DNA of 64,000 bases from Gracilinanus agilis (lineage: Eukaryota). Below are positions 7,025 through 61,699 of this stretch, piece by piece. Positions within the stretch are counted from its first letter, which is position 1. The number at the start of each line of letters is the position of its first letter. The stretch lies in contig NC_058135.1 of the NCBI RefSeq assembly GCF_016433145.1, positions 279,249,876 through 279,313,875 of the forward strand, in the 5' to 3' direction. The translations under genes and the position numbers were made by a program. Below the pieces are notes generated by a model that was given only the letters and a program-made list of their open reading frames with translations, was not told the DNA's origin and did not search any database.

Positions 7025-8045
7025 CAGTTGATAAATGGTCAAAAGATATAAGTGGGCAGTTTTCAGAGGAAGAAATCAAAGCTATCTATAGCCATATGAA
7101 AAATGCTCTAAATCACTCTTCACTAGAGAAACACAAACTAAAACAACTCTGAGGTACCACCTCACTCCTATCAAATTGGCTATTATGAAAGAAAAGAGAA
7201 ATTACAAGTGTTGGAGGGCATGCCAGAAAATTGGGTCACTAATGCACTGTTGGTGGAGTTGTGAACTGATCCAACCATTTTGGAGAGTAATTTAGAATTA
7301 TGCTCAAAGGGCTTAAAATTGTGCATACCTTTTAATCTAGCAATACCACCACTAAATCTGTGTACTAAAGAGATTAAAAACAAAAGAGAAAAGGCCCTAT
7401 CTGTCCAGAAATATTTACAACAGCTCTTTTTGTTATTGCAAAGAATTGGAAATTGAAGGAATGCCCATCAAAATTAGGGAATGCCTGAACAAACTGTGGT
7501 ATATGATTGCAATAAAATACTACTGGGCTATAAGAAATGAAGAATAAGATGATTTCAGAAAAACCTAGACAGACTTACATGAACTGATGCAGAGTGAAGT
7601 GAACAGAACCAGGAGAACATTGGACCTATAACAGCAATATTGTATGTTGAACCACGATGAATGACTTAGCAATTCTAGCAATTCCTAGCAATACAGTGAT
7701 CCATGACAATCCCAAAGGACTCATAATGGAAAATGTCATCTACCTCCAGAGAAAGAACTGATGGATTTTGAATGCAGACAAAAACATGCTATATTTCACT
7801 TTATTTCTCTACATTTTTTTGTTTGAGTTCTCTTCTACAAAATGACTTATGTGGAAAAATTTTTTAAAAAGATTGCATATGTAAAATCTACATTAGTTCC
7901 CTTATCATCTTGGAGAAGGAGGGCGGGAAGAGGGAGAGAATTTGAAAGTTAAAATTAAAAAATCCAAATGTTAAATTAAAATTGTTTTTGCATGTAATCG
8001 GGGAAAAATAAAATATTATTAAGAATCAAAATATAAAAAAAGAAA
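7025..8045 (+). mobile_element. L1 3' fragment (end of ORF2 plus 3' UTR)
   Basis: gataaatggtcaaaagat...cagttttcagaggaagaaatcaaa...ctctgaggtaccacctcac motifs and an A-rich tail. Confidence 0.9.
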
Positions 8046-8825: not shown

Positions 8826-9317
8826 AAATGCATTTTTAATATAATTGAGTGATTTCTTTGGAGATATACTGAATAGGGAAGTATTTAGACTGTGACCTTA
8901 GTGGGTGGGACTATGAGCCAGGAGAATTATGAGTTATTGTTAGAGTACCTAAATAGCAATTCAGAACCCAACATGTACTATGCAATCCATAGAAACCGAG
9001 ATATCTGGTGCTTTCTATCCATTCACAGTTGGAAAGTGTGGTGGCATTGAAAGCTGTAAGTGCCACCCAGTGAAATCTGTAGATATAGCACTTTGAGCAG
9101 CTGCTCTAAGGGATACCACTCAGTTCTAGTTGAAACACTGTTCCCTTGCACCCCTAATTGTCCCCGTGTGTGGCAAAAAAAATAATAGATCTATAAGGAG
9201 TTGTATTCTTCAGTATAAACTGGAAGTTAGTGTGCATGTCTGAGAGTGTGTCAGTATCAGCAGTGAGTTAATAGCATCATCCATGTGCAGTTCTAATCAG
9301 ATATTGGGCAAATGCAA

Positions 9318-10082
9318 AGGGCTTTAAAAGACTGTCTACCCTTTGATCCAGCTATACCACTGCTGGGTTTATACCCCAAAGAGATCATAAGGAAAAAGAC
9401 TTGTACAAAAATATTTGTAGCCACACTCTTTGTGGTAGCAAAAAATCAGAAAATGAGGGAATGACCTTCGATTGGGGAATGGCTGAACAAATTGTGGTAT
9501 CTGTTGGTGATGGAATGATATTGTGCTGCAAAGAATGAGGAATTGGAGGAATTCCATGTGAACTGGAAAGACCTCCAGGAAGTGATGCAGAGTGAAAGGA
9601 GCAGAACCAGGAGAACCTTATGCACAGAGACGGATATACTGTGGTGCAATCGAATGTAACAGACTTCTGTACTAGCAGCAATGCAATGACCCAGGACAAT
9701 TCTGAGGGACTTATGAGAAAGAACGCAATCCACAACCAGAGAAAGAATGGTGGGAGCAGAAAAACAGAAGAAAAATAACTGCTTGTCCACATGGGACGAT
9801 GGGGATATGACTGGGGATGTAGACACTAAACCATCACCCTAGAGCAAATATCAAAATTATGGAAATAGGTCTTGATCAATGACACATGTAAAACCCAGTG
9901 GAATTGCACGTTGGCTATGGGAGGGGGGTAGAAGGAGGGGAGGGAAAGAACATGAATCATGTAGCCATGGAAAAATTTTCTTAATAAAAAATATTTAAAA
10001 AAAGAAACAAAAAGAGTAAAGAATCCAGGATGAGCTGAAATTCAACAAACACTTAATAAATTAATGCATTCTTTGAAAAAAA
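9318..10082 (+). mobile_element. 5'-truncated L1 (L1_Mdo-like) with 17-bp TSD
   Basis: ccctttgatccagctataccactgctggg... L1 3' end. TSD atattgggcaaatgcaa at 9301-9317 and 10083-10099. Confidence 0.92.
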
Positions 10083-58879: not shown

Positions 58880-59112
58880 GCACTAGTTAAGTATTGGCAT
58901 GTGTGCCATCCCCAACATGGGGGAACTGCTCTGTTCCCTCTTTTCCCAGCGCACAAGGACATTTTTTGCATGCCTTACCCTTCTGTCCAGCCACCCAAAA
59001 CAAGCACTTCCTCCCTCAACTCTCTTCCTCCAGTAATGGTGGGGAGTGGAGGTCACAGACAACTTGAATTTGCCCTCCTGGCACTTGAACTCAAAAACCT
59101 TTACCAAAACTG
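58880..59112. mobile_element. Decayed hAT MITE (OposCharlie-like)
   Basis: ggcatgtgtgcca near the left end and accttt/accaaaactg at the right end resemble OC1-type non-autonomous elements. Confidence 0.45.
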
Positions 59113-59128
59113 GCCTAGACTATTTCAA

Positions 59129-59186
59129 TAACCCACCACTAGCAACCAAACTCAATCCCCCCATAGATAGGTGAAGACTTAGAAGT
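59129..59186 (-). pseudogene. MT-ND6: Second short ND6-derived NUMT fragment
   Basis: acccaccactagcaaccaaactcaatccccccatagataggtgaagacttagaagt encodes SKSSPIYGG(fs)LSLVASGG on the minus strand. Overlaps the ND6 segment at 60838-60892. Confidence 0.75.
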
Positions 59187-59619
59187 ATCTAAATACTTCT
59201 TTTTTTTCCTTCACTGCTATTCATCTTCCACTCGGCTGCCATTTGGGTTTTTCTTGGCAAAGATACTGGTGTGGTTGGTCATCTCCTTGTCTTGTTCATT
59301 TTATAGAGACAAACACAGTTAAGAGACTTGCCCAGTGTCACATGGCTAGTAAGGGTCTGAGACCATATTTGAACTCACAAAGATAAGACTTTCTGACTCC
59401 AGACTTGGCACTCTATCCACTGTAGCTAAAGGGCTTTACAATTATATTATTAATCCTTATCACAACTCTGGGAAATAGATTTTAAAAGTCTTTACAGGTG
59501 AGGAAACAGGCAGGTGGAGGTTAAGTGACTTGCTCAGTGTCACATAGCTCATAAATATTTAAGACTAGATTTGAACTTGTGTTCCTGACTCCAGATCCAG
59601 TGTCCTATCCAGTCTTCCT

Positions 59620-59820
59620 TTTTTTAAAAACCATTACCTTATGTCTTGGAATCAATACTATGTATTGGTTCCCAGGCAGAAGAGTGGCAAGGGCTAGGCA
59701 ATGGGGGTTAAGTGACTTGCCCAAGGTCACACAACTAGGAAGTGTCTGAGGTCAAATTTGAAACCAGGACCTCCCGTCTCTGAGCCTGACTCTCAATCAA
59801 CTGAGCTACCTAGCTGCCCC
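59620..59820 (-). mobile_element. SINE1_Mdo-like SINE
   Basis: TSD ccagtctt. Confidence 0.88.
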
Positions 59821-59919
59821 CCAGTCTTTATCTTGATTTCCTATGAAGTAGGCACCAGAGTCCTTACTGTTCTTGGATTTCCTGATCCACAGTTCTCCTA
59901 GTTTTCTTTTTCTTTAAGA

Positions 59920-60103
59920 AAAAAAGCCCTTACCTTCCATCATACTGTGAATTGGTTCCAAAGAAGAGCAGTAAGGGCTAGGAAATGGAGGTTAAGGGAT
60001 TTGCCCAGAGTCACATAGCTCGGAAGTGTCTGAGATCAAATTTGGATCTAAACCCTCCCATCTCTAGGTTTCAATCTCAATCTAACAAGTCACCTAGCTT
60101 CCC
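59920..60103 (-). mobile_element. SINE1_Mdo-like SINE
   Basis: TSD ttctcctagtttt. Confidence 0.88.
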
Positions 60104-60310
60104 CTTCTCCTAGTTTTTTGATGGTAGATGAATAGGGTTTTCCAAACCTGATTCCTGGCATGTAGCAAGATTATCTGACTTCAAAGCCAGTTTTTTTTGA
60201 TACTGCACCATGCTAAATTTACTTCTATTGGTATTGATAGAATGCCAACCATGCCTTTTCATCTTATATGTTTGTGGAACTGGTTTTGCTGACCTGGTCA
60301 GTTCAGGTTT

Positions 60311-60335
60311 CTGAGATGTAAATTATGGCTGACTG
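60311..60335 (+). pseudogene. MT-CYB: Short CYTB-derived fragment (RDVNYGWL region) running into assembly gap
   Basis: ctgagatgtaaattatggctgactg matches 61234-61255 at 21/22 nt. Confidence 0.65.
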
Positions 60336-60513
60336 NNNNNNNNNNNNNNNNNNNNNNNNNNNNNNNNNNNNNNNNNNNNNNNNNNNNNNNNNNNNNNNNN
60401 NNNNNNNNNNNNNNNNNNNNNNNNNNNNNNNNNNNNNNNNNNNNNNNNNNNNNNNNNNNNNNNNNNNNNNNNNNNNNNNNNNNNNNNNNNNNNNNNNNNN
60501 NNNNNNNNNNNNN
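60336..60513. other. Assembly gap (178 N)
   Basis: Run of N. A single N also occurs at 43930. Confidence 1.
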
Positions 60514-60546
60514 TATATATATATATATACACACATATATATATAC

Positions 60547-60580
<34 letters not shown>

Positions 60581-60582
<2 letters not shown>

Positions 60583-60953
60583 CCTAAAACAGTATCTTCT
60601 AAACCAGTGATGGGCAAACTTTTTAAAGAGGGGGCCAAAGGAAAGGAAATGCTCATCTGTCAGTCTGTTTCTAAGGCAACTCTTTCCATGTTTCATTGTA
60701 TTATATCCTACTCATTGTATTTGTTAGATTAGGAATAATGTGGCTGGGCTGGAGAGAACATTTCAGGGGGCTGCATGTGGCCCACAGCTGGCTGTAGTTT
60801 GCCCATCACTGTTCTAAACTAACAACAGTTGCACAACCTAACCCACACTACCAACCAAACTCAATCCCCCATAGACAGGTGAAGTTTAAAAGTGAAAGCT
60901 ACAAACTGAACAATTAATACCAAAGAAAAGAAGAAAATAATGATCATTTTCAT
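60581..60953 (-). pseudogene. MT-ND6: NUMT: 5' part of mitochondrial ND6, frameshifted and interrupted by a hAT MITE
   Basis: Minus strand from ATG at 60953 reads MKMIIIFFFSLVLIVQFVAF, then a frameshifted KPSP(I/V)YGGLSLV-like segment, and LEDTVLG across the MITE. Matches marsupial ND6 N-terminus and mitochondrial gene order. Confidence 0.85.
60605..60811. mobile_element. hAT MITE (207 bp) inserted in NUMT ND6
   Basis: Perfect 16-bp TIR cagtgatgggcaaact and perfect 8-bp TSD ttctaaac. Confidence 0.93.
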
Positions 60954-61021
60954 TATTTAGTATGGACTCTAACCATAACCTGTGACACGAAAAGCCATTG
61001 TTGTATTTCAACTACAAAATC
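60954..61021 (-). pseudogene. MT-TE: NUMT: mitochondrial tRNA-Glu copy
   Basis: gtatggactctaaccataacctgtgacacgaaaagccattgttgtatttcaactacaaaa lies between the ND6 start and the CYTB start, as in mammalian mtDNA. Confidence 0.85.
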
Positions 61022-61024
61022 CTA

Positions 61025-61255
61025 ATGACTAACCTACACAGAAACCACCCACTTATAAAAATCATCAACCACTCCTTCATTGATTTATCAGCACCATCTA
61101 TCGTTTCAGGCTGATGAAACTTGGGCTCCCTTCTTGGGATCTGCCTGGTTATGCAAATCCTAGCAGGACTATTTCTAGCTATACGTTACCCAGCAGACAC
61201 CCTCACAGCCTTCTCATCAGTAGCCCACATCAGCTGAGATGTAAACTATGGCTGA
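61025..61255 (+). pseudogene. MT-CYB: NUMT: first 77 codons of cytochrome b
   Basis: In the vertebrate mitochondrial code reads [76 protein letters not shown] with no indels. Confidence 0.93.
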
Positions 61256-61699
61256 AGGATTTGAAACCTATAAGGCCTGAATTAGCTGAAACCTAAACTG
61301 GCCTGAAAGAAGTTTCAGTGTAAAAAAAGATGCTCTGAGTCTGGATGAGTAACGATGTCAAGGGAAAGAACCCTGGAGACCTGGGACATTTCTCCTCTGC
61401 ACTTAAGGTTCATCCTTTTAGGACTCATATAAGGTTAATAAAACATTCCAGACAGTGCATTCATGCCTCGGAAATATACAGAGACCTTGAAGATGGCGCT
61501 CAGTACATTGGGCAGCTTTTCTAAGGTGGGTTTATGGGAAGACATGGATGAAAATGATATCAGATGAAAAGGCATGATTTTATACATACCAGTAGAGGTA
61601 AATTACTCCTCCCTCAGCATGGAGCAGTTCAAAGAACACTGGATTTGGAGTCAGATCAGGATTTGAATACAAGTTCTGCCACCAACTTCAGTGTGGCAA

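What the first reader, a model, noticed from the sequence alone, without database searches (positions are those of the whole stretch)
60311..61255. NUMT with terminal redundancy: circularly permuted mitochondrial insert across an assembly gap
Seen: the mitochondrial block ND6-tRNA-Glu-CYTB(1-77) ends at ctgagatgtaaactatggctga (61234-61255). The same 22-mer (21/22) starts a second CYTB piece at 60311 that continues (…ctgactg) into the N gap. Inference: the order CYTB(downstream)-gap-ND6-trnE-CYTB(upstream) is what a circular mtDNA opened inside CYTB would give, or a tandem NUMT duplication. The gap may hide much more mitochondrial sequence than 178 bp.
Basis: partly seen in the sequence, partly recalled or inferred. 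Interest (0 to 1): 0.7.

Follow-up and report, generated by a model that had tools for sequence, protein, structure and literature searches.

The report
Rearranged mitochondrial insert at assembly gap
An old, decayed piece of mitochondrial DNA in an opossum chromosome carries the same 22 letters of the cytochrome b gene at both ends, so it is not one simple pasted fragment, but the unread gap hides whether a circle, a repair copying slip or an assembly error made it.

Summary
A 22-nt stretch of cytochrome b (CYTB nt 210-231) lies at 60311-60332, against the 178-N gap, and again at 61234-61255, the right end of a NUMT. The copies match 21/22, and no shuffle of 100 gave two matches.

- **The NUMT:** ND6 5' part (inferred), mt-tRNA-Glu and CYTB codons 1-77. 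It is decayed and split by a MITE.
Only 3 nt (CTG) follow the left copy. They fit CYTB codon 78, but they fit the nuclear CTGAA-type tandem repeat at the right junction equally well.
- **The gap:** it abuts a (TA)n(TG)n microsatellite, an ordinary reason for a short-read gap. Mitochondrial-like sequence on the right contig stops about 52 ND6 codons in.
- **New here:** a second 73-nt ND6 piece lies at 59126-59198. The nuclear flanks form an imperfect inverted repeat around the insert (130-nt arms plus a 15-nt motif at the left junction).

I read the locus as a complex break-repair scar, not a hidden whole mitochondrial genome.

The scan flagged similar permuted NUMTs at two other places in this genome (s1-179290, s1-171003).

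Interest is modest.

The parts
59126..59198 (-). Second, isolated ND6-like fragment, a duplicate of part of the main ND6 piece
   Evidence: blastn gives 59129-59186 versus 60839-60893 at 88% over 58 nt on the same strand. A gapped alignment extends it to 59126-59198, and it translates to SSPIYGG versus TSPVYGG in the main copy. Composition is G-poor, 11%.
60139..60269 (.). Left arm of the nuclear inverted repeat that flanks the insert
   Evidence: Local alignment to the reverse complement of 61557-61699 scores 117, against shuffles of 34 +/- 5 with a maximum of 58. Identity is 94/118 ungapped columns. A profile of the pair finds no third copy in the window.
60296..60310 (.). Last 15 nt of the left flank, an inverted near-copy of right-flank 61289-61303
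   Evidence: 13/15 match; 0.45% of 2000 shuffles reach the score in a 41 x 75 nt comparison. A third, direct copy lies at 59103-59116, 13/14.
60311..60332 (+). Left copy of the 22-nt CYTB segment (nt 210-231, codons 70/71-77)
   Evidence: 21/22 to 61234-61255. A profile of the window's SINE family does not hit it.
60333..60335 (+). CTG, the only letters between the left copy and the gap
   Evidence: Read directly. Ambiguous: fits CYTB codon 78 (Leu) or the start of a CTGAA-type nuclear repeat unit.
60336..60513 (.). Assembly gap, 178 N (estimated length). Not filled and not looked up.
60514..60580 (.). (TA)n then (TG)n microsatellite at the right edge of the gap
   Evidence: TRF: TA x19.5 at 60514-60552 and TG x14.5 at 60552-60580. 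The sub-threshold Rfam miRNA hits here are low-complexity noise.
60581..60604 (-). Probable continuation of ND6 left of the MITE (about codons 45-52); includes the left target-site duplication
   Evidence: Contiguous with 60820 onward once the MITE and one TSD copy are removed, and almost G-free. Mitochondrial origin is inferred, not tested.
60605..60811 (.). 207-bp hAT-like MITE inserted into the NUMT
   Evidence: Perfect 16-nt terminal inverted repeats and an identical 8-bp target-site duplication TTCTAAAC at 60597-60604 and 60812-60819. No other copy in the window.
60820..60952 (-). ND6 5' part (inferred), about 44 codons, with stops and probably one frameshift
   Evidence: Lies next to tRNA-Glu on the same strand, as in vertebrate mtDNA. 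A/C-rich and G-poor, 11% G. Not recognised by Pfam or the solved-structure search.
60953..61021 (-). Mitochondrial tRNA-Glu (anticodon TTC) pseudogene
   Evidence: ARAGORN -mtmam; Rfam RF00005 37.4 bits.
61025..61255 (+). CYTB codons 1-77 (pseudogene)
   Evidence: Mitochondrial-code translation; Pfam PF00033 E 3.8e-9; solved cytochrome b E 2.8e-12.
61234..61255 (+). Right copy of the 22-nt CYTB segment, at the right end of the NUMT
61252..61307 (.). Nuclear 25-bp tandem repeat (2.2 units) whose first 4 nt, CTGA, are also the last 4 nt of the NUMT, giving junction microhomology
   Evidence: TRF, score 63; sequence read.
61557..61699 (.). Right arm of the nuclear inverted repeat

Best explanation
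This is a genuine, old, single-locus NUMT. A fragment of mitochondrial DNA (ND6 5' part, tRNA-Glu, first 77 codons of CYTB) was captured when a chromosome break was repaired.

The break lay at or near the centre of a nuclear inverted repeat. The repair was of the copying kind, with template switching (microhomology-mediated, polymerase-theta or MMBIR type). Short pieces of the captured DNA and of the flank were therefore written a second time nearby:
- the last 22 nt of the insert at the left junction;
- 73 nt of ND6 about 1.1 kb upstream;
- a 15-nt flank motif, in inverted orientation, at the left junction.

Later, four SINEs and one MITE were inserted, and a dinucleotide microsatellite grew at the left side of the insert. 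That microsatellite, not hidden mitochondrial DNA, is why the short-read assembly has a small gap there.

Shown: the NUMT, the repeats, the MITE and the junction microhomology. Inferred: the repair mechanism, the single event and the small true size of the gap.
For: - **NUMT identity:**
- **Terminal 22-nt direct repeat:**
- **Other low-copy local duplicates of insert and flank within 2.6 kb:** the ND6 piece at 88%, inverted arms at 80%, the 15-nt inverted motif abutting the left junction at 13/15, and a 13/14 direct copy beside the ND6 fragment. Pooled identity is about 84%, and 21/22 fits that figure (my calculation), so one event is possible.
- **Enrichment:** the locus is in the upper tail for such pairs, 7 of 77 sliding 3.2-kb regions having 3 or more.
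- **Junction:** CTGA microhomology at the right junction, as found at about half of human NUMT breakpoints (PMC9630118).
- **Age of the copies:** both 22-mers carry TGA where CYTB has an Arg CGA codon. Copying after CpG decay in the nucleus explains this more easily than two parallel decays.
- **Gap:** it abuts (TA)n(TG)n, and the assembly came from 100-bp reads.
- **Parallel case:** an earlier follow-up at another locus of this genome reached a similar reading (s1-179290). That is a lead, not evidence.
Against: - The content and true size of the gap are unknown. Nothing here shows that the left copy stops after 22-25 nt.
- The left copy sits exactly at the nuclear junction and the right copy exactly at the other end. 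A circle copied or opened once explains that very simply.
- The short motif matches were noticed post hoc (p about 0.003-0.02).
- Without a repeat library, the 130-nt arms could be two members of a low-copy old repeat family. Parts of them look MIR-like to me, from memory only.
- The enrichment test is weak.
- No mitogenome of the species could be reached, so the limits of mitochondrial homology and any shared derived substitutions are untested.
Confidence: 0.4

Rival explanations
1. Slightly more than one turn of a small circle, or a mitochondrial circle opened once with staggered ends. In the first form, a mitochondrial fragment of about 0.7-0.9 kb (ND6 5' part to CYTB about nt 234-400) was circularised and then copied or opened inside CYTB. 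In the second form, a whole mtDNA circle was opened there and later lost its interior. Either way nt 210-231 ended up at both ends. The left copy would then continue as CYTB for up to about 150 nt inside a gap that really is small.
For: Direct terminal repeat exactly at both mitochondrial-nuclear junctions, with a start-to-start spacing of 923 bp. CTG after the left copy fits codon 78. Chance overlap of two unrelated fragments is only about 0.2-0.3%. Two other NUMTs of this genome were noted as permuted with short terminal overlaps (s1-179290, s1-171003), but those are unchecked AI notes.
Against: It rests on 3 ambiguous nucleotides. It does not explain the second ND6 fragment or the inverted flank copies. 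The shared CGA-to-TGA change then needs two parallel decays. G at a third codon position is rare on this strand of vertebrate mtDNA (general knowledge).
Confidence: 0.25
2. The gap hides a whole mitochondrial genome (about 16.3 kb plus 22 nt), or further units of a tandem NUMT array that the short-read assembler collapsed.
For: The topology is what a collapsed head-to-tail array or a more-than-unit-length insert would give. Multi-copy and concatenated NUMTs exist in humans (PMC9630118). The assembly is short-read with 8% N.
Against: - The right contig does not continue into ND6 beyond about codon 52. It enters a microsatellite instead.
- A sized 178-N gap in a Supernova/GapCloser assembly normally rests on spanning read pairs (inference).
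- The insert is old and decayed, with no sign of near-identical units (21/22 and 88% between copies).
Confidence: 0.1
3. Assembly artefact. The last 25 nt of the left contig are a wrong local extension (GapCloser or a chimeric read) taken from another NUMT copy, or the two contigs are wrongly joined.
For: Gap edges in this assembly come from local re-assembly with 100-bp reads. The mitochondrial-like stretch at the contig end is only 25 nt long.
Against: - A k-mer walk cannot cross from unrelated nuclear sequence into CYTB-like sequence without reads that hold the junction.
- The twin is not at the other edge of the same gap but 720 nt away, and the copies differ by one base.
- The piece carries TGA at the Arg codon, so it is not the abundant true mtDNA.
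- The left flank's last 15 nt are related to the right flank, which ties the two contigs to one locus.
Confidence: 0.15
4. Two unrelated mitochondrial fragments were ligated side by side into one break (an ordinary concatenated NUMT), and the 22-nt overlap of their ends is a coincidence.
For: Multi-fragment NUMTs are common (PMC9630118).
Against: The probability of such an overlap is about 25/16336 per pair of ends.
Confidence: 0.05

Closest known systems
Ordinary NUMTs captured at double-strand breaks by end joining
   Same: Mitochondrial origin, preserved mitochondrial gene order (tRNA-Glu on minus, CYTB on plus, 3-nt spacer), loss of coding capacity, location among transposons, and 4-nt junction microhomology. 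Didelphids are NUMT-rich (PMC10764098).
   Different: An ordinary NUMT is colinear with mtDNA and has no piece of itself repeated at the opposite junction.
Concatenated or complex NUMTs and multi-copy mega-NUMTs in human genomes (Wei et al. 2022, PMC9630118)
   Same: Non-colinear mtDNA-to-mtDNA arrangement inside one nuclear insertion.
   Different: Those were shown by split reads and long reads, and some are many full mtDNA copies. Here the internal mtDNA junction, if there is one, lies in an unread gap, and only 22-25 nt of the second piece are visible.
Tandemly amplified NUMT of the domestic cat (Lopez et al. 1994; from memory, not checked here)
   Same: Head-to-tail topology of mitochondrial sequence in the nucleus.
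   Different: No evidence here for more than one unit. Copies differ by 5-12%, and read depth is untested.
Templated insertions and short local duplications at repair junctions (polymerase-theta end joining, MMBIR/FoSTeS; general knowledge)
   Same: Short direct and inverted copies of nearby sequence (15 to 130 nt) next to the junctions, with microhomology.
   Different: These mechanisms are defined experimentally. Here only the scar is seen, tens of millions of years later by rough judgement.
Circle-mediated permuted duplications (eccDNA re-insertion, for example the cattle KIT colour-sidedness alleles; from memory)
   Same: The end of a unit joined in front of its start, in direct orientation.
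   Different: In those cases the circle junction was sequenced. Here it would lie in the gap.
Permuted NUMT beside a fold-back copy at another locus of the same genome (scan note s1-179290)
   Same: Slightly more than one turn of mitochondrial sequence, plus an inverted copy of flanking DNA.
   Different: That locus is 1.7 kb, made of two mitochondrial fragments and without a gap.

Membership tests
NUMT (nuclear mitochondrial DNA segment) | Sequence homologous to mitochondrial genes | tested here: met
   CYTB: Pfam PF00033 E 3.8e-9 and solved cytochrome b E 2.8e-12. mt-tRNA-Glu: ARAGORN -mtmam and Rfam 37.4 bits. ND6 is inferred only (searches found nothing).
NUMT (nuclear mitochondrial DNA segment) | Vertebrate mitochondrial gene order and strands kept (ND6 minus, tRNA-Glu minus, CYTB plus) | tested here: met
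   tRNA-Glu 60953-61021 on minus; CYTB from 61025 on plus, 3 nt apart. ND6 placed by position and motif.
NUMT (nuclear mitochondrial DNA segment) | Embedded in nuclear DNA and no longer coding | tested here: met
   Flanked by multi-copy SINEs, split by a MITE with a target-site duplication, with an AGA stop in CYTB and stops in ND6 under the mitochondrial code.
NUMT (nuclear mitochondrial DNA segment) | Similarity to the species' own mitogenome, with measurable divergence | not testable with these tools
Circularly permuted or more-than-unit-length NUMT | The same mitochondrial segment at both ends of the insert, in direct orientation | tested here: met
   60311-60332 and 61234-61255, 21/22.
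Circularly permuted or more-than-unit-length NUMT | The left copy continues downstream on the mitochondrial map | tested here: inconclusive
   Only CTG is readable. It fits codon 78 and also fits a CTGAA-type nuclear repeat unit.
Circularly permuted or more-than-unit-length NUMT | Uninterrupted mitochondrial sequence between the two copies | not testable with these tools
What is readable argues against it: the right contig begins with a microsatellite, and mitochondrial-like sequence starts only at about 60581.
Tandem NUMT array | Two or more full units, or raised read depth | not testable with these tools
   Only one unit plus 22 nt is in the assembly. Depth is unavailable.
Gap-edge duplication artefact of short-read assembly | The same sequence directly on both edges of one gap, identical | tested here: not met
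   The twin lies 720 nt from the right edge, the copies differ at one base, and they are followed by different letters.
hAT-type MITE (for 60605-60811) | Terminal inverted repeats and an 8-bp target-site duplication | tested here: met
   16-nt perfect TIRs and TTCTAAAC on both sides. Family assignment against a repeat library was not possible.

The most novel reading that the evidence does not exclude
In this opossum lineage, NUMTs are repeatedly made by copying slightly more than one turn of small circular mitochondrial DNA fragments during replicative repair of breaks at nuclear inverted repeats. This would leave a short terminal redundancy and inverted flank copies. This locus would be one of at least three such scars in the genome (with s1-179290 and s1-171003).
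Probability: 0.15. Interest if true: 0.6.

Novelty: new member of a known kind. Interest (0 to 1): 0.3.

Why it matters
NUMTs are usually treated as passively ligated linear fragments. An insert whose two ends overlap on the mitochondrial map, flanked by inverted nuclear copies, points to copy-type repair or a circular intermediate.

If the pattern recurs in the NUMT-rich didelphid genomes, it would say something about how mitochondrial DNA enters chromosomes and where chromosomes break.

There is also a practical point. NUMT surveys that merge BLAST hits would count this locus as two or three insertions. The CYTB 5' region is a common marker, so a decayed nuclear copy is worth knowing about.

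As it stands, the locus is an ordinary old pseudogene fragment with an unresolved structure.

Tried and rejected
- **Reads across the gap:** Continuity, depth and junction support are untested.
- **Getting a marsupial mitogenome for comparison:**
  - The search for homologous proteins needs 40 aa and the piece is 39, bounded by TGA on both sides. I did not read through the stops.
  - A degenerate DNA pattern for the motif [12 protein letters not shown] found nothing in metagenome, viral or prokaryote contigs.
  - The exhaustive representative search was not used. The operators asked to spare it, the protein is not in doubt, and 50%-identity representatives would hardly be didelphid.
- **ND6 confirmation:** Pfam and the solved-structure search returned nothing for the 24-aa and 31-aa pieces.
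- **Left 22-mer as a decayed SINE fragment:** there is a 14/18 resemblance to the SINE core (family D7). I rejected the idea because a profile of 13 SINE copies from the window gives no hit at the left junction, even with filters off, while the CYTB copy matches 21/22.
- **Left region 59187-60310 as a decayed colinear second copy of ND6, tRNA-Glu and CYTB:** rejected, with no similarity beyond the listed pieces.
- **Extension of the inverted arms outward or inward:** none found.
- **Other mitochondrial tRNAs in the window:** ARAGORN's permissive mode lists 9, but only tRNA-Glu is backed by Rfam. One call spans the N gap and is spurious.
- **Literature:** no paper found describing terminal redundancy of NUMTs. 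Searches for rolling circle or eccDNA with NUMT gave nothing relevant.

Full report
**What is in the sequence**

- **The repeat.** The copies match 21/22, and nothing else in the 64-kb window matches at up to 3-4 mismatches. None of 100 dinucleotide shuffles gave two matches.
- **What follows each copy.** The left copy is followed by CTG and then the 178-N gap (60336-60513). The right copy is followed by AGG and unrelated sequence.
- **tRNA-Glu.** The block to the right is mitochondrial. ARAGORN in mammalian-mitochondrial mode finds tRNA-Glu (TTC) at 60953-61021 on the minus strand. Rfam's tRNA model scores it 37.4 bits, and it is the only hit above gathering score in the whole window.
- **CYTB.** It starts 3 nt later at 61025 and reads 77 codons without a frameshift, with one AGA stop in the mitochondrial code. 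Codons 32-70 match Pfam Cytochrome_B (E 3.8e-9) and residues 32-69 of solved mammalian cytochrome b (E 2.8e-12).
- **Position of the 22-mer.** It is CYTB nt 210-231, that is the last base of codon 70 through codon 77.
- **ND6.** It is placed only by position, strand, composition (11% G) and an SPVYGG-type motif. Its short pieces are not recognised by Pfam or the solved-structure search.

- **MITE.** The ND6 part is split by a 207-bp MITE (60605-60811). It has perfect 16-nt terminal inverted repeats and an intact 8-bp target-site duplication, so it arrived after the NUMT.
- **Left limit of mitochondrial-like sequence.** With the MITE removed, G-poor sequence runs left to about 60581, roughly 52 ND6 codons. 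It then gives way to a (TA)19.5(TG)14.5 microsatellite that runs up to the gap.
- **Right junction.** The last four bases of the NUMT (CTGA) are also the first four of a nuclear 25-bp tandem repeat at 61252-61307. This is a microhomology junction of the kind seen at about half of human NUMT breakpoints (PMC9630118).
- **Why CTG proves nothing.** The three letters after the left 22-mer fit CYTB codon 78 (Leu). They fit the start of another CTGAA-type repeat unit just as well. They do not show that CYTB continues into the gap.

**More local duplicates**

- **Second ND6 piece.** It lies at 59126-59198, on the same strand, 88% identical over 58 nt to 60839-60893. It is isolated: neither side aligns with the main block. 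Between it and the left junction lie four multi-copy SINEs.
- **Inverted arms.** 60139-60269 matches the reverse complement of 61557-61699. The alignment scores 117 against 34 +/- 5 for shuffles, with 94/118 ungapped identity. A profile of the pair finds no third copy in the window, and the homology does not extend further.
- **Inverted motif at the left junction.** The last 15 nt of the left flank, which directly abut the left 22-mer, are an inverted 13/15 copy of 61289-61303 (0.45% of shuffles reach it).
- **Third copy of that motif.** A 13/14 direct copy sits 10 nt left of the second ND6 piece.
- **How unusual this is.** In a sliding-window control the locus is among 7 of 77 regions with three or more low-copy local pairs. 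That is modest support only.
- **Divergence.** Pooled, the duplicates are about 84% identical, and 21/22 is compatible with that, so a single old event is possible.

**The gap**

- **Not tested.** The program's first question was whether the two sides are continuous or in frame. 
- **Species and assembly.** Earlier scan notes name the genome as the agile gracile opossum. This agrees with seven pieces and 37.9% GC. Its paper says the assembly was made from stLFR and 100-bp reads with Supernova 2.1.1 and SOAPdenovo GapCloser, and that the mitogenome is 16,336 bp (PMC8390783).
- **What follows from that (inference).** Gap edges are products of local assembly. A sized gap of 178 normally rests on spanning read pairs. 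A long dinucleotide repeat is a routine cause of such gaps.

**Weighing the readings**

- **Chance.** Overlap of two unrelated fragments is improbable, about 25 in 16,336.
- **Classical artefact.** A gap-edge duplication does not fit. The twin is 720 nt from the right gap edge, differs by one base and is followed by different letters. The piece also has TGA at the Arg codon, so it is not true mtDNA. A wrong extension from another NUMT copy cannot be excluded without reads (0.15).
A whole mtDNA or an array in the gap is not excluded, but two things speak against it: the right contig leaves ND6 after about 52 codons for a microsatellite, and the gap is sized (0.10).
- **Two readings of a real, small structure remain.**
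  - The first is a small circle, or a once-opened circle, copied slightly beyond one turn (0.25).
  - The second is a copying type of break repair that wrote short pieces of insert and flank a second time (0.40).
- **Why I prefer the second.** It also accounts for the extra ND6 piece, the inverted motif at the junction and the inverted arms. The shared CGA-to-TGA change in both 22-mers is also easier to explain if the copy was made from nuclear, already decayed DNA.
- **Limits of that preference.** The margin is small, the motif matches were seen post hoc, and the arms could be a low-copy repeat family. Parts look MIR-like to me, from memory only.
- **Possible link to fragility.** The inverted flanks around the insert suggest that the break occurred at a hairpin-prone inverted repeat. 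That is inference.

**Comparison with what is known**

NUMT capture at breaks, microhomology at junctions, concatenated multi-fragment NUMTs and multi-copy mega-NUMTs are all described (PMC9630118). Didelphids are known to be NUMT-rich, and tandem or post-insertion duplication is acknowledged as hard to score (PMC10764098).

I found no paper on terminal redundancy of NUMTs. The scan itself has flagged two other permuted NUMTs with short terminal overlaps in this genome, and one NUMT between inverted SINEs (s1-179290, s1-171003, s1-179289). These are unchecked notes and count as leads only.

**Verdict**

This is a new member of a known kind (a complex NUMT).

Interest is 0.3. It would rise if gap closure showed CYTB continuing, or if a genome-wide census showed the pattern to be recurrent.

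- The exhaustive protein search was spared.

Noticed in passing
window 60605-60811: A 207-bp hAT-like MITE with perfect 16-nt terminal inverted repeats and an intact 8-bp target-site duplication (TTCTAAAC) sits inside the NUMT. There is no other copy in the window. It looks young relative to the NUMT, so the family may have been active recently in this lineage.
   Followed up: partly
window 59126-59198: An isolated 73-nt ND6-like fragment, 88% identical to the main NUMT's ND6 part, lies 1.1 kb left of the left junction. Four SINE insertions lie between them.
   Followed up: yes
window 60139-60269 and 61557-61699: A 130-143-nt inverted pair (80% identity) brackets the NUMT, with no third copy in the 64 kb. 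It is either a locus-specific inverted duplication or a low-copy old repeat; part looks MIR-like from memory.
   Followed up: partly
window 61252-61307: A 25-bp nuclear tandem repeat (2.2 units) starts inside the last 4 nt of the NUMT. Short copies of its motif also lie at 59103-59116 (direct) and 60296-60310 (inverted), each beside a mitochondrial piece.
   Followed up: partly
window 60514-60585: The (TA)n(TG)n microsatellite gives sub-threshold Rfam hits to several miRNA families (mir-297, mir-3149 and others, 26-47 bits against cut-offs of 75-100). These are low-complexity false positives.
   Followed up: yes
window 60282-60358: ARAGORN in mitochondrial mode calls a 'tRNA-Tyr' that spans the N gap, which is spurious. 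Seven further permissive mt-tRNA calls elsewhere in the window have no Rfam support.
   Followed up: yes
window 7305-7757 and 9315-9747: A roughly 300-450-nt direct low-copy duplication (about 69-72% identity) with copies 2 kb apart, seen in the control scan for local repeats.
   Followed up: no
window 43930: A single N, probably a residue of gap closing.
   Followed up: no
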